DNA of 36,841 bases from Octopus bimaculoides (taxonomy: Eukaryota). The stretch lies in contig NC_068992.1 in NCBI RefSeq assembly GCF_001194135.2, forward strand, positions 15,108,013-15,144,853. The letters are read 5' to 3'. Below the pieces are notes generated by a model. The model had not been told where the DNA came from. It saw only the letters and a program-made list of their open reading frames with translations, and did no database searches. Position numbers and translations under genes: made by a program. Each line of letters starts with the position of its first letter. The first letter of the stretch is position 1. This document shows, piece after piece, positions 1 through 35,552 of the stretch.

Positions 1-369
1 ATATATATATATATATATATATAAACACATATATATTTATATATGCATGTGCTGGCATCAGGAAAAGGATTTTTGTAGTAGTAGTAGTAGTAGAATTATG
101 TGATGTTAGGTGGTGTTGTTTAGCACGGAGTCATTCTGAATGAATAGACCAAGGCTATGATAAAAGGCTGTCCAAGACTATGGTAAAAGGCTGTCTAAGC
201 ATGACCATCACGTCTTTTCAAAGAATGCTCTATTAGAATACATCTTGATCAATTTTTTTTTTCTTTAATACAGTAAAGTAGTATCAGAAAATAAAAGATT
301 TAGCTGCTGTTTCTAACAGTTTGAGTAACCCGATAGAGATTTCCCCATTGGTTTGGTGTGTAGCAGTTT

Positions 370-1018
370 TGGAAGTATTATTGTTGTTGTTGTTGTTGTT
401 GTTTGTGGTGGTGTTGGCAGCAGTGGTGGTGGTAGTTGTATCTGTGATGTCAGTGGTAACAGTGTTAGTTTTACTAGTAGTAGTAGCAGTAGTAGTGTTG
501 ATATTAGAGACAGTATAATTGATAGTGTCGTTAATATTGCCGGTCCTAGTGGTGCTGATAGTTTCAAGAGTACAGATTATAGTATTGGTAACAGTGGTAG
601 TGGTGGTGGTGGTGGTGGTGGTGGTTTGTCGTATTGATAGCACAACAAATGATGATAGTATTGGTAATGGTAGACATTGGTGAGAATAACAATAGTGGTG
701 ATAAAGATGATAGTAGTAGTAGTAGTAGTAGTATAGCCGTGGCGGTGGTGGTGGTAGTGGTGGTTGTGGTGGTGGTGGTGGTGGTGGCGGTAGTGGTGGT
801 GGTGGTCATGGCATTGGTAATAATGGTTGTAGTGTGTGTGTGTGTGGTAGCAGTAGTAGAAATAATACCAACAACACTAGAAACACCAGTTGCAACAGTG
901 CTGCTTGTGGTAGTAGCTGTTGTAGTAGTAGTAGTAGTAGTAGTATTTGCATTAGTAGCAGTGGTGGTGGTGGTGGTGGTGGTGGTGGTGGTGGTGGTGG
1001 TGGTGGTATTCAATCTGG
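370..1018. repeat. Compound G/T-rich trinucleotide microsatellite (GGT/AGT/TTG)
   Basis: Long imperfect runs of GGT, AGT and TTG; source of the poly-Thr/Val/Gly pseudo-ORFs in the track. Confidence 0.95.
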
Positions 1019-1129
1019 TGTTAATGATGTGTAAGCTTGGGAAGTCTACTCTGCCTAGCGAAGCAGCTTTTTCCTCTGCAATATAGCAGTTGAGTAGGAA
1101 CCAGATAGTGTTGGCAAAACGGTTCTAGT

Positions 1130-1451
1130 ACAGCCGCTGCTGCCACTGCTGCTGCTGTTACCACCAGAGATTGTACCCCTATTACTACCACCACACCACG
1201 ACCACCACAACTTCCGACTACCACCAGCACTACTACCACTACTGCTGCTGCTATTACGACTACTATTACAACAGCTGCTGCTGCTAATACTATAACTACT
1301 ATAACAACAACAACAGCTGCTGCTGCTACCACCACCACGACTACTACTACTTGAACAGCTGCTGCTGCTGCTACTACTACTACCACCACCACCACCTCTA
1401 CCACCACCACCTCCACCACCACCACTACTACCCTGCTGCTGCTGCTGTTAA

Positions 1452-1492
<41 letters not shown>
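1130..1492. repeat. Compound C/A-rich trinucleotide microsatellite (ACC/ACT/GCT)
   Basis: Runs of ACC, ACT and GCT ending in a perfect (ACT)n at about 1453-1492. Confidence 0.95.
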
Positions 1493-1495
1493 TTG

Positions 1496-1835
1496 ATTTT
1501 AAATTCTGGCGCAAGGCCTGCAGTTTGGGAGCAGAGAGTAAGGTCGGACCCCAGTGCTCAACTGGTACTTATTGTTAGTATTCTGCGCAAAATGCTTAGC
1601 GGCATTTCGTCTGCCTTTATGTTCTGAGTTCAAATTCCACTGAGGGTTGACTTTGCTTTTCATCCTTTCAGGGTCAACAAAATAAGTACCTGTCGAATAC
1701 TGGGGTCCATGAAGGCAGAGTGCCATGAAAGGCAAAGTTGATCGCAACAGAATTTGAACTCAGAACATAAATAGGGACAAAATGCTGCCAAGCAATTAAC
1801 CTGACATGCTAACGAATCTGCCAGCTCGCTGCCTT
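1496..1835 (-). mobile_element. Family A SINE split by a nested opposite-strand family A copy
   Basis: Minus-strand 3' half at 1496-1573 and 5' half at 1726-1835 (with the TGGCAG A-box-like head), interrupted by a 5'-truncated plus-strand copy at 1584-1707. All align by eye to the copy at 16792-17013. Confidence 0.8.
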
Positions 1836-2707: not shown

Positions 2708-3292
2708 AATGTAATGATTCTTTGGGACTTCCCAGTATGTATAGACTGGACCATCAAAGCAAATAAACCAGATATAATTGTGAAAGACCAAAACAATAAA
2801 GTCCGTTTATTGATTGACATGAGCATACCCTGTGACCATAATATCTTGGCAAAAAATTAGATGAGCTCAGAAAATATAAAGATTTGCTATTTGCAATCGA
2901 AAATATGTGGCATCTCAAGTCAGTTACAATGCCAATGATTGTAGGAGCACTTGGAATGATCAAAAAAAGAATCAAAAACTATTTAAGAATGATTCCTGGC
3001 TTACCATCCATTCAGGAAGTGCAAAAGATTGTCTTAACTGGTATGTCATGCGTACTGAGAAGAGCATTGTCATTGTGAATTTTCTTTCCCTTTCCCCTTT
3101 ATTTTCTTTGTTTACTTTCTTATTTTTTAATTTTTTTCCCTCTCTCTGTCTTTCTTCCCCTCTTTCTCCATCACGACTTTGTAAATGAACAATCTGATGT
3201 GTTTATCTTAATGGCCTGCCAATGTATACAGTGAGCTTCACTGCCATAAGTGTCAGAAAGACAAGAAATGGAAACAGAACTGAAAGAAAATG
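2708..3292 (+). mobile_element. 5'-truncated R4/Dong-type non-LTR retrotransposon (restriction-like endonuclease C-terminus + 3' UTR)
   Basis: Translates with one frameshift near 2870 as ILWDFPVCIDWTIKANKPDIIVKDQNNKVRLLIDMSIPCDHNI...KYKDL...MIVGALGMIKK...VQKIVLTGMSCVLRRALSL*, the PD..D REL domain and LGT..LR.VL-type tail of R2/R4/NeSL-group LINEs. Stop at 3078; (AAT)n on both sides. Confidence 0.9.
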
Positions 3293-3327
<35 letters not shown>

Positions 3328-3426
3328 CCTTTCTACTAAAGGTACAAGACCTGGAATTTTGAGTTAGGGAGCTAGTCGATTAAATTGACCCCAGTACTCA
3401 ACTGGTATTTATTTTATTGACTCCGT
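3328..3426 (-). mobile_element. Family A SINE, 3' half
   Basis: cctttctact...gtacaagacctggaa...tcgattaaattgaccccagtactcaactggta is the reverse complement of the family A tail; abuts (AAT)n. Confidence 0.8.
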
Positions 3427-14694: not shown

Positions 14695-14764
14695 TATTAT
14701 TATTATTATTATTATCATTATTATTATTACTATTATTACTATTATTATTATTATTATTATTATT
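14695..14764. repeat. (ATT)n microsatellite between two Dong-type fragments
   Basis: Direct. Confidence 0.95.
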
Positions 14765-15125
14765 CTGAAAGACTCTCGGATAGTTCTTTATTACCGATTA
14801 TTTTTTACTTGAAAGCAGGATACAACAAATCACCAAAGGTTTCAAGTAGTGCCTTCTCCTGTGACTCAAAGAGACAATACTCTCCTTAGAATGCTAGTTG
14901 TACCCAACAGTTCTGTCTTCTGGATCACTTCGAGCCTGACAGCAGCTCCGATATTTTTTATATTTTTTCAAAGCCTTTGGAAATTGCTCCTAATGCTCCA
15001 ATTACCACCGGTGTCACTATTACTTTCCTCATGCCCCATAACTTTGCTATGTTGTCGCGAATTGGCTGGTATTTCTCAATCTTTTCTGTTTCCTTACATT
15101 TCACCCGCGAATCGCCTGGTATTGC
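14765..15125 (-). mobile_element. R4/Dong-type LINE 3' end (REL domain end + short 3' UTR); upstream part lost in gap
   Basis: AIPGDSRVKCKETEKIEKYQPIRDNIAKLWGMRKVIVTPVVIGALGAISKGFEK (frameshift) IKNIGAAVRLEVIQKTELLGTTSILRRVLSL*; stop at 14866-14868; followed by (AAT)n in element sense. Confidence 0.9.
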
Positions 15126-16046
15126 NNNNNNNNNNNNNNNNNNNNNNNNNNNNNNNNNNNNNNNNNNNNNNNNNNNNNNNNNNNNNNNNNNNNNNNNNNN
15201 NNNNNNNNNNNNNNNNNNNNNNNNNNNNNNNNNNNNNNNNNNNNNNNNNNNNNNNNNNNNNNNNNNNNNNNNNNNNNNNNNNNNNNNNNNNNNNNNNNNN
15301 NNNNNNNNNNNNNNNNNNNNNNNNNNNNNNNNNNNNNNNNNNNNNNNNNNNNNNNNNNNNNNNNNNNNNNNNNNNNNNNNNNNNNNNNNNNNNNNNNNNN
15401 NNNNNNNNNNNNNNNNNNNNNNNNNNNNNNNNNNNNNNNNNNNNNNNNNNNNNNNNNNNNNNNNNNNNNNNNNNNNNNNNNNNNNNNNNNNNNNNNNNNN
15501 NNNNNNNNNNNNNNNNNNNNNNNNNNNNNNNNNNNNNNNNNNNNNNNNNNNNNNNNNNNNNNNNNNNNNNNNNNNNNNNNNNNNNNNNNNNNNNNNNNNN
15601 NNNNNNNNNNNNNNNNNNNNNNNNNNNNNNNNNNNNNNNNNNNNNNNNNNNNNNNNNNNNNNNNNNNNNNNNNNNNNNNNNNNNNNNNNNNNNNNNNNNN
15701 NNNNNNNNNNNNNNNNNNNNNNNNNNNNNNNNNNNNNNNNNNNNNNNNNNNNNNNNNNNNNNNNNNNNNNNNNNNNNNNNNNNNNNNNNNNNNNNNNNNN
15801 NNNNNNNNNNNNNNNNNNNNNNNNNNNNNNNNNNNNNNNNNNNNNNNNNNNNNNNNNNNNNNNNNNNNNNNNNNNNNNNNNNNNNNNNNNNNNNNNNNNN
15901 NNNNNNNNNNNNNNNNNNNNNNNNNNNNNNNNNNNNNNNNNNNNNNNNNNNNNNNNNNNNNNNNNNNNNNNNNNNNNNNNNNNNNNNNNNNNNNNNNNNN
16001 NNNNNNNNNNNNNNNNNNNNNNNNNNNNNNNNNNNNNNNNNNNNNN
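15126..16046. other. Assembly gap
   Basis: N-run. Other gaps: 5360-5369, 23904-24005, 26659-27246, 29036-29396. Confidence 1.
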
Positions 16047-16599: not shown

Positions 16600-17013
16600 T
16601 CAGTATTTCGTCTGTCTTTATGTTCTGAGTTCAAATTCTGCCGAGGTCGTCTTTGCCTTTCATCCTTTCAGGGTCGATAAATTAAGTACCAGTTGCATAC
16701 TGGCTTCAATCTAATGGACTGGCTCCCCCCCCCCCACACCACCAATATTTCGGAACTTGTGCCTAGAGTAGAAAATATTATTATTATTATTAAGGCGGCG
16801 AGCTGGCAGAATCCTTAGCATGCCGAGCAAAATGCTTATCAGCATTTCGTCTGTCTTTACGTTCTGAGTTCAAATTTCGCCGAGGACGACTTTGTTTTTC
16901 ATCCTTCAGGGGTAGATAAATTAAGTACTAGTCAAATACTGGGGTCGATGCGATCGACTATCTTCCTCCCCACAAATTCCAGGTCTTGTACCTATAGTAG
17001 AAAGGATTATTAA
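16600..17013 (+). mobile_element. Two head-to-tail family A SINEs (16600-16790 5'-truncated; 16792-17013 full) joined by (ATT)n
   Basis: Full copy: aaggcggcgagctggcagaatcc (A-box), gagttcaaattt (B-box), body, ...cctatagtagaaaggattatt. Confidence 0.9.
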
Positions 17014-17118
17014 TTTCATCATTTATCATCCTCTTTCAGTTGTTTCCATTTCTTGCGGAGTGTCTTCCTGACACCTAGAGCAGAGAAACTCATTGTATAC
17101 ATTTGTAGGCCATTAAAA

Positions 17119-17207
17119 TTGCTGTTGTTGGCACTCCGTCGCTTACGACGTCGAGGGTTCCAGTTGATCTGATCAACAGAACAGCCTGCTCGTGAAATTA
17201 ACGTGCA
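17119..17207 (-). mobile_element. Family B SINE, 5'-truncated 3' end
   Basis: Nearly identical to the reverse complement of the last ~90 nt of 18410-18796, including the (AAC)n tail. Confidence 0.9.
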
Positions 17208-17711: not shown

Positions 17712-18409
17712 AGGAGAGATGGATAGATGGTGCAGTTAAAATTACGTTAAGTATGTTATTTACCTCACTTATGTTGTCCAGTAACATCTTGGGAGCAAAC
17801 GTTTATAACGTGACAATGTTTTGGTAACGTTAACGCAATACCGAAGCATCACAGTCTTTTGTTTGTCTTTTGCTGTTGGCGCCTTGTTTACTGAACACCA
17901 CTTGCTCTCTGGTAATTAATTTGTAGTCCTTGGGTGAGAAAGTCAATGACCAAAGTAAACTATCTTTTTTCAGCTGTGATAGCAATGTCATATCAGATAA
18001 CTAATTAGAGTATTTACTATTGCAAACATGGTCGGTAAACAAACTTCGAGATTATTTATATTATTTTTGTCTTAATGTATTTACTATTCAGTAATTTTCC
18101 TTTTTATATTCACATTCTTAAAAAAATGTTTCTGCTTCTTAAAAATAATTCAAAAAAATAACGAGAAGAGGAAATTAAGTGCTTGATTCTTTCTTTCTCT
18201 CTCTGTAAATTTGTGATAACATATTGTTGCGAAGTAAGAATTGATTTGTTATGGCTAAAAAGTATTCAGATTTACACAACGGTTGCGTGAATTCCTGGTA
18301 AACTGCATTTGGGATTATCGAGATTGAGTGTGTACCGAGTGTGTCTACAGAGCTGCGTCGTGCATAACACTTCTAAAATAATATTTCTGCATCTATATAA
18401 ATGAGTGTT

Positions 18410-18796
18410 GTGGAGGCGCAATGGCCCAGTGGTTAGGGCAGCGAACTCGCGGTCATAGGATCACGGTTTCGATTCCATGACCGGGCGTTGTGAGTGTTTA
18501 TTGAGCGAAAACACCTAAAGCTCCATGAGGCTCCGGCAGGGGATGGTGGCGAACCCTGCTGTACTCTTTCACCACAACTTTCTCTCACTCTTTCTTCCTG
18601 TTTCTGTTGTGCCTGTAATTCAAAGGGCCAGCCTTGTCACACTGTGTCACGCTGAATATCCCCGAGAACTACGTTAAGAGTACACGTGTCTGTGGAGTGC
18701 TCAGCCACTTGCACGTTAATTTCACGAGCAGGATGTTCCGTTGATTGGATCAACTGGAACCCTCGACGTCGTAAGCGACGGAGTGCCAACAACAAC
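18410..18796 (+). mobile_element. Family B tRNA-derived SINE, full length, (AAC)n tail (probably one of the described Octopus OR/OK SINEs; not verified)
   Basis: A-box TGGCCCAGTGG 18422-18432, B-box GGTTTCGATTCC 18465-18476; 12-bp TSD ataaatgagtgt 18397-18408 / ataaatgaatgt 18797-18808. Confidence 0.95.
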
Positions 18797-20207
18797 ATAA
18801 ATGAATGTGCATACGTGTGTGTGTGTGTGTGTCAGTAGACATGTGTGAGAAAATGTGCGTATTATACAAGACATGTAAATGCAACATGCATGCAAATATG
18901 TCTTTACGTGTATACTATTATTATTGTCTCGCGCGCGCGTGTGTGTGTGTGTGTGTGAATGGCTATATGTGAGAAAACACGTGAGTTAACACAGACATGC
19001 AAATTCAAGATTGATATAACTGTATTCCTACGTGTATCTCCACTCTCTCTCTCTCTCTCTCGTGCGCGTGTATCAACATCCATACTTTCATCTTGTAAAT
19101 TTATTCATATAAATTCTCGAATACTAATATTTTACGTTATCTCAAAATGGTCTTATTTAATATTCCTGGTTTTACAAACGACTGCACACTTTCGTATGTT
19201 GTAAATGATTCTCCAATCTTATTAATGCTTAAACATGTCTTTGACTACGACAGAGTAAATTCCGAAATCTCTTCATGGATTTTATTTTAATCCTCTGCCA
19301 CAATCTCTTTTAGATGTCAGTCTTTTGCAGGTAACATTCTAATTTCAAATTCCATTGATTCTTCATCCATTTGAGTGCCTCTTATGTGTTGGTGGTCAGC
19401 TGTGGTTTAATAGTTTTAAGTCAATGAGAATAAATCTCTACCACAAGATAGAAAATCTTATTATAAAGCTCATAATGACCTTTGAGTAGCTTGCCGGATA
19501 CCTAATCTATTCGGCTATTTGAAAATGAAATCCCTGTCATCATCTCGGAGCGGTAAACGACCTATCAGTGATTATTTAATGACATTTAAACAAGTTGCCA
19601 AATATTTAATCCACTTGGTTTGTTGACATTTCCAAGACAATAAAATTCAACATAAGAACACTTCAACGCCAAGACCATTCCCGCAAAACTACATTTGGTG
19701 TTAAAAATATAATCTAATAAAATAAAATAGAATAACAAATTTTGGAATTATAATAATCTATTGAGATACAAAAATGTATACACTCACCATTATCATCATT
19801 ATCTATATTATTATTGTTATTTATTTTTTAATCTGCACGTTTGTTGCAATCACTTGCCGAGACACACCCAGCGCCCTCTGGCAAGTGAAGGATAAAAAAT
19901 GTTACAGTATAACTGGAAGCTTGAGGAGGGGAAATAGCAGGAGCAGTAGCGAAATTTCTATCAGTATTATTGTTATTTTTAGTTGAATAATTTTTACAAA
20001 TTAATTTTATTTCTGTAGTTCAATTTGGGTGGCAGATATTATCTGTCGTCCGGTTTAAAAACTACAACGAAACACTGGGTGATTATAGCAGAGTCCATTC
20101 TGTTGCAACTATTTAAATCAGCTTTCCGATTTGAGGATGGTTTCTGCTCATCCTATCACCACTCTCGGTGGATCTATAAGGAGACATGTGTAATCCTTTC
20201 TGATTAA

Positions 20208-23897: not shown

Positions 23898-24006
23898 GGA
23901 TCTNNNNNNNNNNNNNNNNNNNNNNNNNNNNNNNNNNNNNNNNNNNNNNNNNNNNNNNNNNNNNNNNNNNNNNNNNNNNNNNNNNNNNNNNNNNNNNNNN
24001 NNNNNA

Positions 24007-25526: not shown

Positions 25527-25836
25527 GTGGAGGCGCAATGGCCCAGTGGTTAGGGCAGCGGATTCGCAGTCAGAGGATCGCGGTTTCGATTCCCAGACTG
25601 GGGGTTGTGTGTGTTTATTGAGCGAAAACACCTAAAGCTCCACCAGGCTCCAGCTGGGGGTGGTAGCGACCCCTGTTGTTCTCTTTCACCCCAACTTTCT
25701 CTCACTGTTTCTTGAGTAAAGCTGCGATAGACTGGCGTCCCGTCCAGTTGGAGGGGGGAACACATACGCCATAGAAACTGGGAAACCGGGCCCATGAGCC
25801 TGGTTAGGCCTTAAAAGGGTACAAATAAAAATAAAA
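25527..25836 (+). mobile_element. Family B' SINE: family B head and body with a different 3' half
   Basis: First ~180 nt colinear with 18410 onward, then gctgcgatagactggcgtcccgtccag...aaaccgggcccatg..., tail aaataaaaataaaa; 13-bp TSD ttggaaggaaacg 25514-25526 / ttggaaggagacg 25837-25849. Confidence 0.9.
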
Positions 25837-26650: not shown

Positions 26651-27246
26651 TAGTGTTANNNNNNNNNNNNNNNNNNNNNNNNNNNNNNNNNNNNNNNNNN
26701 NNNNNNNNNNNNNNNNNNNNNNNNNNNNNNNNNNNNNNNNNNNNNNNNNNNNNNNNNNNNNNNNNNNNNNNNNNNNNNNNNNNNNNNNNNNNNNNNNNNN
26801 NNNNNNNNNNNNNNNNNNNNNNNNNNNNNNNNNNNNNNNNNNNNNNNNNNNNNNNNNNNNNNNNNNNNNNNNNNNNNNNNNNNNNNNNNNNNNNNNNNNN
26901 NNNNNNNNNNNNNNNNNNNNNNNNNNNNNNNNNNNNNNNNNNNNNNNNNNNNNNNNNNNNNNNNNNNNNNNNNNNNNNNNNNNNNNNNNNNNNNNNNNNN
27001 NNNNNNNNNNNNNNNNNNNNNNNNNNNNNNNNNNNNNNNNNNNNNNNNNNNNNNNNNNNNNNNNNNNNNNNNNNNNNNNNNNNNNNNNNNNNNNNNNNNN
27101 NNNNNNNNNNNNNNNNNNNNNNNNNNNNNNNNNNNNNNNNNNNNNNNNNNNNNNNNNNNNNNNNNNNNNNNNNNNNNNNNNNNNNNNNNNNNNNNNNNNN
27201 NNNNNNNNNNNNNNNNNNNNNNNNNNNNNNNNNNNNNNNNNNNNNN

Positions 27247-27503
27247 TTCTCGGGGGTATTCAGCGTGACACAGTGTGACAAGGCTGACCCTTTGAATTAC
27301 AGGCACAACAGAAACAGGAAGTAAGAGTGAGAGAAATTGTGGTGAAATAGTACAGCAGAGTTCGCCACCATCCCCTGCCGGAGCCTCGTGGAGCTTTAGG
27401 TGTTTTCGCTCAATAAACACTCACAACGCCCGGTCTGGGAATCGAAACCACGATCCTATGACCGCGAGTCCACTGCCCTAACCACTGGCCATTGCGCCTC
27501 CAC
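27247..27503 (-). mobile_element. Family B SINE, 3' part lost in gap
   Basis: Reverse complement of the first ~255 nt of 18410-18796. Confidence 0.93.
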
Positions 27504-29035: not shown

Positions 29036-29712
29036 NNNNNNNNNNNNNNNNNNNNNNNNNNNNNNNNNNNNNNNNNNNNNNNNNNNNNNNNNNNNNNNNN
29101 NNNNNNNNNNNNNNNNNNNNNNNNNNNNNNNNNNNNNNNNNNNNNNNNNNNNNNNNNNNNNNNNNNNNNNNNNNNNNNNNNNNNNNNNNNNNNNNNNNNN
29201 NNNNNNNNNNNNNNNNNNNNNNNNNNNNNNNNNNNNNNNNNNNNNNNNNNNNNNNNNNNNNNNNNNNNNNNNNNNNNNNNNNNNNNNNNNNNNNNNNNNN
29301 NNNNNNNNNNNNNNNNNNNNNNNNNNNNNNNNNNNNNNNNNNNNNNNNNNNNNNNNNNNNNNNNNNNNNNNNNNNNNNNNNNNNNNNNNNNNNNNNTACA
29401 TACATACATATATACATACATACATATATACATACATATATATCTATATATATACATACATACATATATATATATACATACATACATACATATATATATA
29501 CATACATACATACATATATATATACATACATACATACATATACATACATACATACATACATATATATATACATACATACATATATACATACATACATATA
29601 TACATACATACATACATATATACATACATACATATATACATACATACATACATACATATATACATACATACATATATACGTCTAGAATTATATATATATA
29701 TATATATATATG
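28750..29712. repeat. Large compound (TA)n/(TACA)n microsatellite spanning a gap
   Basis: Direct. Confidence 0.97.
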
Positions 29713-30825: not shown

Positions 30826-31124
30826 CCGAGTAAGTTATATGTGTATATTTTTTACAAATGTTTATATGTATATATCTATGTATATATACACACACACGCA
30901 CACACACAAACGCATAAATATTATGCAAAAACGAAGCAGAAATATAAAGTATAATCGAAAACCATTTACATATTTGATTTATCTTTCCGTTTTGTTATTA
31001 CCAACAGCAGTTAAACGATTCGACATAAAAATGATGGATAATGCTTCATCATGGCGACTACATAACATTCGCAAAAAACGATTTTTCGTCACCCTTTCAC
31101 TCTTGTACTTCATCAGAAGTTTGT

Positions 31125-31319
31125 TGTTTAGTCTTAAGTCTTATAAAATTGTGTAGAACTGTAAGCAAACGTATATCTAAGACTGCAATGTTAAAGATGT
31201 CCGTTGGATGAAATTTAGTTACTATACTTAGCAAGCGTGGCTGTATGGCTAAGAAAGCTCGTTTCAAATTTTGACACAAGGCTAGAAATTACGGGTGGAG
31301 AATGTAGTGGATTAAAACG
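31125..31319 (+). repeat. 195-bp direct repeat, left copy (putative TSD)
   Basis: Matches 31709-31903 with 7 substitutions and no indels. Confidence 0.95.
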
Positions 31320-31708
31320 TTGTTGTTGTTGGCACTCCGTCGCTTACGACGTCTAGGGTTCCAGTTGATCCGATCAACGGAACAGCCTGCTCGTGAAATT
31401 AACGTGCAAGTGGCTGAGCACTCCACTGACACGTGTACCCTTAACGTAGTTCTCGGGGATATTCAGCGTGACACAGTGTGTGACAAGGTTGGCCCTTTGA
31501 AATACAGGCACAACAGAAACAGGAAGTAAGAGTGAGAGAAAGTTGTGGTGAAAGAGTACAGCAGGGTTCATCACCATCTCCTGCCGGGGCATCGTGGAGC
31601 TTTAGGTGTTTTCACTCAATAAACACTCACAACGCCCGGTCTGGGAATCGAAACCGCGATCCTATGACTGCGAGTCTGCTGCCCTAACCACTGGGCCATT
31701 GCGCCTCC
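31320..31708 (-). mobile_element. Family B SINE, full length
   Basis: Reverse complement of 18410-18796 from GGAGGCGC to the (AAC)n tail. Confidence 0.95.
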
Positions 31709-31903
31709 TGTTTAGGCCTAAGTCTTATGAAATTGTGTAGAACTGTAAGCAAACGTATATCTATGACTGCAATGTTAAAGATGCCCGTTGGATGAAATTT
31801 AGTTACTATACTTAGCAAGCGTGGCTGTGTGGCTAAGAAAGCTCGTTTCAAATTTTGACACAAGGCTAGAAATTACGGGTGGAGAATGTGGTGGATTAAA
31901 ACG
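31709..31903 (+). repeat. 195-bp direct repeat, right copy (putative TSD)
   Basis: See left copy; continues into the rest of a family A fragment (to about 31965). Confidence 0.95.
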
Positions 31904-31973
31904 ACTCCAGTGCTTAACTGGTACTTATCGATCCCGAAAGGATGAAAGACAAACTCGGTGGAATACAACCACT

Positions 31974-32193
31974 AAATATTTGTTTCAAATTCTGGCACAA
32001 AGTCAGCAATTTCGAGGAATGAGGTGCGTCGATTAGATCGACCCATCCCCCGAGTTCAACATGTACTTATTTTATCGACTCCGAAAGGATGAAAGACCAA
32101 AGTCGACTTCGACAGAAATTGAGCTCGGACGAAATGCTCCTAAGTATTTAATCCGGCCTGTTTACAATTACAATTCTGCCAGTTCATCGCCTT
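31974..32193 (-). mobile_element. Family A SINE, full length
   Basis: Reverse complement of tail, body, B-box and head (ttctgccagttcatcgcctt). Confidence 0.88.
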
Positions 32194-34828: not shown

Positions 34829-35035
34829 TTCACCAAGAGGCATGGGGGGGGGGAGTAGGGAAGTCGATTGACTCAACGCTCAGTGCTCAACTGGTACTTA
34901 TTTTATCGACCTCGAAATGATGAAAGGCAAAGTTGATCTCAGCGACATTTGAACTCAGATCGCAAAAGCGGACGAAATGCCGCCAAGAGTTTTGCCCGAC
35001 GTGCTAACGATTCAATCAGCTCGCCGCCCCTTGAG

Positions 35036-35079
<44 letters not shown>

Positions 35080-35552
35080 CCTTTCTACTGCAGGCATAAG
35101 GCCATTTAATTTTGGGGGAGGGGACTAGTCGATTACATCGACCCTAGTTTTCAAGTGGTACTTATTTTATCGACCCCAGTGTTCAACTGGTACTTATTTT
35201 GTCGACCTCGAAAGGATGAAAGGCAAAGTAGACCTCGACGGAATTTGAACTCCGAACACAAAGACAAATGAAATGCCGCTATGCATTATGTCTGGCGTGC
35301 TAACGATTCTGCCATCTCACCGCCTTTGATGCATTTAATAATAATATTTTGTGATTGAAGCACACGACCAACAACTTTGAAGAACAGAGGTTAGTGGATA
35401 CTATTGACCCCGGTACTGATATTTAATTTAATCGATATTGGGGTGCCGAAATGCAAAGTTAAAAGTGGCAGGATTTGAATTCTGAATATAAAAGGCCGGA
35501 AGAAATTCACCATTTTTTTACCCTGACGCTCTAGCGATTCTGCCAGCTCACC
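34829..35552 (-). mobile_element. Three head-to-tail family A SINEs (34829-35032, 35079-35326, ~35345-35552) separated by AAT tracts
   Basis: Each shows the reverse-complement body, B-box and head. The middle copy has a 32-bp internal duplication (35137-35168 / 35169-35200). Confidence 0.85.

What the first reader, a model, noticed from the sequence alone, without database searches (positions are those of the whole stretch)
31125..31903. SINE insertion with a 195-bp target-site duplication
Seen: a full-length family B SINE (31320-31708) is flanked exactly by 195-bp direct repeats (7 mismatches, no indels). The duplicated segment cuts through an older family A fragment that resumes only after the right copy, so the pre-insertion site was single-copy. 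A sibling copy (18410) has only a 12-bp TSD. Established: most TSDs are under about 20 bp, but C. elegans RTE-1 is known for ~200-bp duplications, and (CAA)n-type tails are typical of RTE-clade elements. Inference: an RTE-driven SINE that duplicates host DNA on insertion, with a very wide TSD range; a route to copying regulatory or exonic sequence.
Basis: partly seen in the sequence, partly recalled or inferred. Interest (0 to 1): 0.75.

Follow-up and report, generated by a model that had tools for sequence, protein, structure and literature searches.

The report
SINE insertion with 195-bp target duplication
A 389-base mobile element (a SINE) sits exactly between two copies of a 195-base piece of host DNA that was single-copy before it arrived, which is best read as a rare but already known outcome of retroelement insertion, not a new mechanism.

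Summary
A 389-nt SINE lies on the minus strand at 31320-31708. Its (CAA)4 tail is at 31320 and its head, with A- and B-box motifs, is at 31708. It is flanked exactly by 195-nt direct repeats, 31125-31319 and 31709-31903, with 7 mismatches and no indels. An older family A SINE runs without a break across the right repeat into the flank but is cut at 31319 in the left repeat, so the site was single-copy before insertion.

The best explanation is one target-primed reverse-transcription event whose two strand breaks were 195 bp apart (confidence about 0.75). Both inferred nick sites read AAACR^AC in the same register on opposite strands (p about 0.004 to 0.02, post hoc). This hints that a sequence-preferring nuclease made both cuts.

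The RTE partner, the "very wide TSD range" of the family and the C. elegans RTE-1 precedent could not be tested. Only two copies in the window have both flanks; the other has an 11/12 12-bp TSD. No octopus data were reachable.

L1 duplications over 100 bp are documented, at up to 10% of de novo events in HeLa cells. This is therefore a new example of a known kind. Interest is low to moderate.

The parts
31125..31319 (.). Left copy (A1) of the 195-nt duplicated host segment. Its last 59 nt are the 5' part of an old family A SINE, cut off at 31319.
   Evidence: repeat; family A broken here
31320..31708 (-). Family B SINE, 389 nt, sense on the minus strand. 5' end GGAGGCGCAATGG at 31708, 3' end at 31320.
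31320..31331 (-). (CAA)4 3' tail of the SINE, read TTGTTGTTGTTG on the + strand. It abuts A1 directly.
31688..31698 (-). A-box match TGGCCCAGTGG (SINE positions 11-21).
31644..31655 (-). B-box-like GGTTTCGATTCC (SINE positions 54-65; one inserted T relative to GGTTCGANNCC).
31709..31903 (.). Right copy (A2) of the 195-nt duplicated segment. The family A SINE continues from it into the flank without a break.
31845..31975 (+). Old family A SINE copy that spans the A2/right-flank boundary. It marks the ancestral, uninterrupted arrangement.
31899..31905 (+). AAACG^AC: inferred first-strand (priming) nick site on the + strand, between 31903 and 31904 of the pre-insertion site.
   Evidence: position inferred from the tail/flank junction
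31123..31129 (-). AAACA^AC on the minus strand (GTTGTTT on +): inferred second-strand nick site, between 31124 and 31125. It also resembles the SINE's (CAA)n tail.
18397..18808 (+). Sibling family B copy (18409/18412-18798), with a 12-bp TSD at 18397-18408 and 18797-18808. Used for comparison.

Best explanation
A single retroposition event by target-primed reverse transcription (TPRT). The pre-insertion site was L-A-R, with one copy of the 195-bp segment A. Step 1: the + strand was nicked at the A|R boundary (...TTAAAACG^ACTCC). Step 2: its 3' end primed copying of the SINE RNA from the (CAA)n tail. Step 3: the opposite strand was broken 195 bp away at the L|A boundary (minus strand ...CTAAACA^ACAAAC), not the usual 10-15 bp away. 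Step 4: second-strand synthesis and fill-in of the two long single-stranded stretches duplicated A on both sides of the new copy. Shown: the exact anatomy, the nesting in family A, and the single-copy ancestral state. Inferred: the order and position of the nicks, and that one event made both junctions. The shared AAACR^AC motif suggests, but does not prove, that the element-borne endonuclease made both cuts at cognate-like sites. The enzyme probably came from a LINE with a (CAA)n tail, possibly RTE-clade.
For: The repeats abut both ends of a full-length SINE to the base, with no extra or missing bases. Family A is colinear across A2|R and interrupted at the A1|tail junction, so A1 is the derived copy and the site was single-copy. 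The insert has the marks of retroposition: A and B boxes, a simple-repeat tail and a slightly truncated 5' end. It belongs to a dispersed family whose other complete copy has an ordinary 12-bp TSD. A1/A2 divergence is K2P 0.037 (95% CI of p 0.015-0.073). That is the same order as the SINE's private divergence (about 13/352 = 3.7%), so the duplication is neither clearly younger nor clearly older than the insertion. Both inferred nick sites read AAACR^AC in the same register on opposite strands. The 7-mer occurs once per strand in the 995-bp empty-site model, each time at a nick. The empirical p is 0.0036 for the fixed register and 0.022 for any 7-nt window. TPRT insertions with TSDs over 100 bp are documented for L1.
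Against: This is one locus in one assembly, with no reads, no empty allele and no orthologue, so a single event is inferred and not observed. The sibling copy's nick site (CATTTAT^ATAG) lacks the AAACRAC motif, so a general endonuclease preference is not established and the motif match was found post hoc. The age comparison has wide error bars and the SINE consensus rests on 3-5 copies. No partner LINE was found.
Confidence: 0.75

Rival explanations
1. Unequal homologous crossover between two haplotypes (or sister copies) that carried independent family B insertions in the same orientation. One would lie at the L|A boundary and one at the A|R boundary. An exchange inside the SINE would give L-A-SINE-A-R.
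For: The product would be structurally identical to what is seen, short TSDs included, so the sequence cannot exclude it (reasoning). Family B is frequent here, with 5 copies or fragments in 35 kb.
Against: It needs two independent same-orientation insertions within 195 bp, on different chromosomes, plus a crossover inside a 389-bp element. From the local density (about 1 copy per 7 kb), a second same-orientation copy within 200 bp is expected at only about 1-2% of copies, before the crossover is required. It does not explain the matching AAACR^AC motifs at the two boundaries any better than two ordinary insertions would.
Confidence: 0.06
2. A 195-bp tandem duplication (A-A) existed first, and the SINE later inserted exactly at its junction.
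For: None specific. Tandem duplications are common, and the duplication's age cannot be separated from the SINE's age.
Against: The insertion would have to hit the junction to the base and make no TSD of its own. No short repeat beyond the 195-nt copies flanks the element, whereas the sibling copy made a 12-bp TSD.
Confidence: 0.03
3. Assembly artefact: the structure does not exist on one molecule and results from mis-threading through a repeated SINE in a gapped short-read scaffold.
For: The window is a scaffold with five N gaps, and one other family B copy is cut by a gap, so SINEs do trouble this assembly.
Against: There is no gap within 1.7 kb. Both novel junctions (A-end|tail and head|A-start) must exist in reads. 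A simple heterozygous insertion with a short TSD cannot generate the head|A-start junction. The two A copies differ at 7 sites spread over the whole 195 nt, which is unlike a duplicated contig end.
Confidence: 0.06
4. Same event, but the distant second break was not made by the element's endonuclease. It was a pre-existing nick or end (a replication or repair intermediate, for example an Okazaki-fragment end or a linker-DNA nick one nucleosome away) that was used to finish integration.
For: For L1, large TSDs are attributed to use of a distal, unrelated nick, and they become frequent when nucleotide-excision repair is defective. The length, 195 bp, is close to one nucleosome repeat or one Okazaki fragment (own knowledge, not tested).
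Against: The second break lies in a motif that matches the first nick site in register, which a random nick would do only about 0.4-2% of the time.
Confidence: 0.25

Closest known systems
LINE-1 insertions with large (>100 bp) target-site duplications (Gilbert 2002/2005 and Symer 2002, as summarised in PMC5223499)
   Same: A TPRT insertion flanked exactly by a long direct duplication of the target. It is explained by a second-strand break far from the first. The literature recognises it as a way to duplicate host DNA.
   Different: Those are L1 events recovered in cultured human cells, with up to 10% over 100 bp in HeLa and most in NER-deficient cells. This is a fixed or segregating germline copy of a non-autonomous SINE with a (CAA)n tail in a mollusc-type repeat landscape.
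RTE-clade LINEs and their SINEs with (CAA)n tails (RTE-1_EC / SINE2-1_EC, RTE1_LA / AFROSINE-2; PMC6007223)
   Same: Short simple-repeat (CAA)n tail, hairpin-capable sequence just upstream of it, and an ordinary TSD of about 12 bp in the sibling copy.
   Different: No shared LINE 3' end was shown. The reported RTE-type TSDs are 7-15 bp. That survey only looked for TSDs of 10-49 bp, so it could not have seen long ones. The first base of this TSD is C, not the A usual for (CAA)n elements.
   Same: If that recollection is right, the length class would be the same.
   Different: Not verifiable here, because the papers are not held. The lead comes from memory only.
Octopus tRNA-derived SINEs OK, OR1, OR2 (Ohshima & Okada 1994) and octopus RTE LINEs (RTE-2_OV; PMC9115989)
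   Same: SINE with A and B boxes in a repeat context typical of octopus genomes. Active RTE-clade LINEs are reported in Octopus.
   Different: I could not compare sequences. Which named family B is, and even the species, were not established with the tools.

Membership tests
SINE (pol III-transcribed non-autonomous retroposon) | Internal pol III promoter (A and B boxes) in the 5' head | tested here: met
   Exact A-box match TGGCCCAGTGG at positions 11-21 and B-box-like GGTTTCGATTCC at 54-65, in both full copies.
SINE (pol III-transcribed non-autonomous retroposon) | Head recognisably derived from a tRNA (cloverleaf) | tested here: inconclusive
   ARAGORN finds no tRNA in the window. Rfam finds no tRNA match even at E<=10. 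Only the box motifs and a GGAGGCG acceptor-like start remain.
SINE (pol III-transcribed non-autonomous retroposon) | Short, non-coding, dispersed copies with unrelated flanks, a simple-repeat 3' tail and TSDs | tested here: met
   Five copies or fragments, 88-96% identical to this copy where they overlap it, with different flanks and tails (CAA)3-4. The sibling copy has a 12-bp TSD. No ORF longer than 72 aa.
RTE-clade-mobilised SINE | 3' end shared with an RTE-clade LINE of the same genome | not testable with these tools
   The window holds no LINE with this 3' end. The 89-nt fragment at 17119-17207 abuts a microsatellite. Three protein-database searches, two metagenome scans, one genome scan and a transcriptome supplement gave nothing.
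RTE-clade-mobilised SINE | Microsatellite-like tail of the kind seen in RTE LINE/SINE pairs | tested here: met
   (CAA)4 tail. (CAA)n is listed for RTE-1_EC, RTE1_LA, RTE1_Pca and their SINEs. It is suggestive but not specific to RTE.
RTE-clade-mobilised SINE | 3' stem-loop upstream of the tail, conserved by covariation | tested here: inconclusive
   Two hairpins are predicted and the differences among copies fall in a loop or give a G-U pair. However, z = -1.4 and there are no compensatory changes with 3 sequences.
TPRT insertion with a long target-site duplication | Direct repeats of host DNA abut both ends of a complete retroposed copy, to the base | tested here: met
TPRT insertion with a long target-site duplication | Duplicated segment was single-copy before insertion | tested here: met
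   Internal evidence only: the family A SINE is continuous across A2|R and interrupted at A1|tail. No other copy of A exists in the window. An orthologous empty site could not be obtained.
TPRT insertion with a long target-site duplication | Both junctions lie on one DNA molecule (not an assembly artefact) | not testable with these tools
   No reads are available. Only indirect arguments apply.
Element family with an intrinsically wide or bimodal TSD length range | Several independent copies with TSDs over 50 bp | not testable with these tools
   Only two copies in the window have both flanks, with TSDs of 195 bp and 12 bp. No other SINE in the window is flanked by long repeats.

The most novel reading that the evidence does not exclude
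The LINE that drives this SINE may habitually produce a second, nucleosome-scale (about 150-250 bp) class of target-site duplications, by cutting both strands at cognate AAACR^AC-like motifs whenever no site is available nearby. (CAA)n-tailed elements in octopus would then be a regular engine of local 0.1-0.3-kb duplications. Standard TSD surveys, which cap the search at under 50 bp, would have missed this class.
Probability: 0.1. Interest if true: 0.55.

Novelty: new member of a known kind. Interest (0 to 1): 0.3.

Why it matters
If real, the locus is a clean natural example of a SINE insertion duplicating about 200 bp of host DNA in the germline. The ancestral state can be read from a nested older repeat. 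The matched nick-site motifs give a testable clue to how the distant second break is chosen, which is the least understood step of TPRT. One locus changes little by itself. Long TSDs and their potential to copy functional DNA are already described for L1, and the DNA duplicated here is non-coding repeat-rich sequence.

Tried and rejected
1. I searched for the same locus or other family B copies elsewhere. Three protein-database searches used ORFs from segment A, the SINE antisense strand and the SINE 3' region, and found no candidates. Two exact-product look-ups found nothing. Exact-pattern scans of metagenome contigs (twice) and genome contigs (once) gave 0 matches. The O. vulgaris transcriptome supplement of PMC9115989 gave 0 matches. 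No empty site, TSD survey or partner LINE could therefore be obtained.

2. tRNA and Rfam detection of the head gave nothing.

3. Pfam on the two LINE-like ORF tails gave nothing directly. They were classified only through library hits. They end in (AAT)n, so they are not the partner of family B.

4. I considered 3'- or 5'-transduction, meaning an insert of SINE plus one copy of A brought from a source locus. I rejected it because it needs a paralogous A next to a source SINE and reinsertion exactly beside the original A. The (CAA)4 tail also lies between the SINE and A1, not after A1.

5. I considered A as an LTR-like part of a composite element. I rejected it because A has no other copy in the window and its right end is an arbitrary point inside a family A SINE.

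6. I looked for microhomology at the 5' junction and found none (CCTAAACA|GGAGGCG).

7. The RTE-1 papers from 1996 and 1998 are not held. Papers citing them gave only short RTE TSDs.

Full report
**Observation**

A 195-nt direct repeat lies at 31125-31319 (A1) and 31709-31903 (A2), with 188/195 identical bases, 5 transitions, 2 transversions and no indel. These two copies are the only occurrences of the segment in the window. They are also the only long direct repeat in the window that is neither a simple repeat nor a transposon copy.

Between them lie 389 nt, at 31320-31708. Read on the minus strand, this stretch begins GGAGGCGCAATGGCCCAGTGG and ends GGAGTGCCAACAACAACAA. Similarity between the repeat copies ends exactly at the element's two ends. 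The nearest assembly gap is 1.7 kb away.

**The insert**

The insert belongs to a dispersed family, called 'B' here. The other members in the window are:
- a full copy at 18412-18798 on the + strand, 94% identical;
- a copy cut by an N gap at 27247-27501;
- a head-only fragment at 25529-25713;
- an 89-nt 3' fragment at 17119-17207.

The head carries an exact A-box match (TGGCCCAGTGG, positions 11-21) and a B-box-like GGTTTCGATTCC (positions 54-65). Neither ARAGORN nor Rfam recognises a tRNA. It is therefore a SINE with a pol III-type head, but its tRNA origin is not demonstrated here.

Other copies start (T)TGTGGAGG, so this copy lacks about 3 nt at its 5' end. Tails are (CAA)3-4. The last 90 nt can form two hairpins, but the support is weak: z = -1.4 and no covariation with three sequences. 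The sibling copy has an ordinary 12-bp TSD, ATAAATGAGTGT at 18397-18408 and ATAAATGAATGT at 18797-18808.

**The ancestral state**

A diverged family A SINE starts at 31845 inside A2 and runs without interruption across 31903/31904 into the right flank. It is colinear there with three other family A copies. The same family A sequence inside A1 stops at 31319, where the SINE B tail begins. The A2|R junction is therefore ancestral and the A1|tail junction is derived. Segment A is not an element with ends of its own.

**Mechanism**

The SINE is on the minus strand, so its cDNA was primed by the + strand. The tail's complement, (TTG)4, follows A1 directly. This places the priming nick on the + strand between A and R: ...GGATTAAAACG^ACTCCAG. 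The SINE's 5' end is joined to the minus-strand end at the other side of A: ...GGCCTAAACA^ACAAACTTC. This places the second break 195 bp away. Fill-in of the two single-stranded stretches then gives A on both sides of the insert. These steps are inferred from the anatomy and from the established TPRT model. They were not observed.

**A detail not in the finding**

The two nick sites match in register, AAACG^AC on the + strand and AAACA^AC on the minus strand. In 200,000 random pairs of opposite-strand positions in this window, 6 of 7 matches in that fixed register occur with p = 0.0036. The figure is p = 0.022 for any 7-nt window within 20 nt. In a 995-bp model of the empty site the motif AAACRAC occurs once on each strand, each time at a nick. 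This suggests one sequence-preferring nuclease cut both strands.

Three cautions apply. The match was found post hoc. The sibling copy's nick site (CATTTAT^ATAG) does not share the motif. The same minus-strand bases (AACAACAA) also resemble the SINE's own tail, which allows a different reading, namely tail-target pairing that exposes that strand. I record it as a clue and nothing stronger.

**Ages**

A1 and A2 differ by K2P 0.037 (95% CI of p 0.015-0.073). The SINE copy has about 13 private differences in 352 comparable sites (3.7%) and differs from its sibling by 5.7%. The SINE is CpG-rich (21 CpG) and the consensus is thin. The figures are therefore compatible with the duplication and the insertion being the same event, but they do not prove it. 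They do argue against a trivially recent artefact such as a duplicated contig end.

**Rivals**

- Unequal crossover between two haplotypes carrying independent same-orientation insertions on either side of A would give an identical product and cannot be excluded from the sequence. It needs a coincidence of about 1-2%, judged from local copy density, before the crossover is even required.
- A pre-existing A-A duplication hit exactly at its junction, with no TSD of its own, is less likely still.
- Misassembly is possible in a gapped scaffold. However, both novel junctions must exist in reads, and a simple heterozygous insertion cannot create the head|A-start junction.
- A sub-variant of the main model, with the distal break being a pre-existing nick, is the explanation favoured for L1 large TSDs. 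It remains open at about a quarter.

**What is known**

TPRT normally gives TSDs under 20 bp. RTE-clade elements mostly give 7-15 bp. The RTE papers I could read report 6-20 bp. L1 events with TSDs over 100 bp are documented, at up to 10% of recovered events in HeLa cells. They reach 5.3 kb and become the majority in NER-deficient cells. Their potential to duplicate exons has already been pointed out. (CAA)n tails are listed for RTE-1_EC, RTE1_LA, RTE1_Pca and their SINEs, and active RTE LINEs are reported in Octopus. The large RTE/SINE TSD survey searched only 10-49 bp, so long TSDs would not have been seen there. The claim about C. elegans RTE-1 could not be checked.

**Limits**

No octopus sequence outside the window could be reached. 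As a result there is no empty site, no read support, no partner LINE and no family-wide TSD distribution. The 'very wide TSD range' rests on two copies.

**Verdict**

The long-TSD reading is the best explanation, at about 0.75. The RTE attribution is plausible but untested. This is a new example of a known, rare outcome of retroposition, with one modestly interesting mechanistic clue.

Noticed in passing
window 2860-3331 (+) and 14700-15125 (-): Two 3' remnants of a non-LTR retrotransposon. Each has an ORF tail with the motif ...KY..L...I..(M/L)W......V.P.VIGALG..., followed by about 200 nt and an (AAT)n tail. The first matches 918 library proteins. The long ones among them carry RVT_1 and zf-RVT with the match at their C-terminus. 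The (AAT)n tail means this is not the partner of the (CAA)n SINE.
   Followed up: partly
window 31123-31129 and 31899-31905: The 195-bp duplicated segment is bounded by an imperfect 7-bp inverted repeat (GTTGTTT ... AAACGAC), that is, AAACR^AC at both inferred nick sites. The left one also equals 8 nt of the complement of the SINE's (CAA)n tail.
   Followed up: yes
window 17100-17131 and 31308-31331: Two of three family B 3' junctions have TTTTAAT directly after the tail: ...CAGCAA|TTTTAATGG at 17119 and ...CAACAA|CGTTTTAATCC at 31320. This may be a target preference (primer strand ATTAAAA), but the sample is far too small.
   Followed up: no
window 16600-16971, 31845-32135, 34881-35324: Family A SINEs occur as head-to-tail pairs about 80% identical (spacings 239, about 137 and 296 bp). 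The second copy starts right after the first copy's (AAT)n tail. This suggests repeated insertion into tails or dimeric units.
   Followed up: no
window 26659-27246 and 27247-27501: One family B copy is truncated by an N gap, and four other N runs are present (5360, 15126-16046, 23904-24005, 29036-29396). The assembly is a gapped scaffold in which SINEs break contigs, which bears on how far any repeat structure here can be trusted.
   Followed up: partly
window 280-1500: More than 1 kb of compound trinucleotide repeats ((GGT)n, (AGT)n, (GCT)n, (ACT)n types) gives long spurious ORFs on both strands.
   Followed up: no
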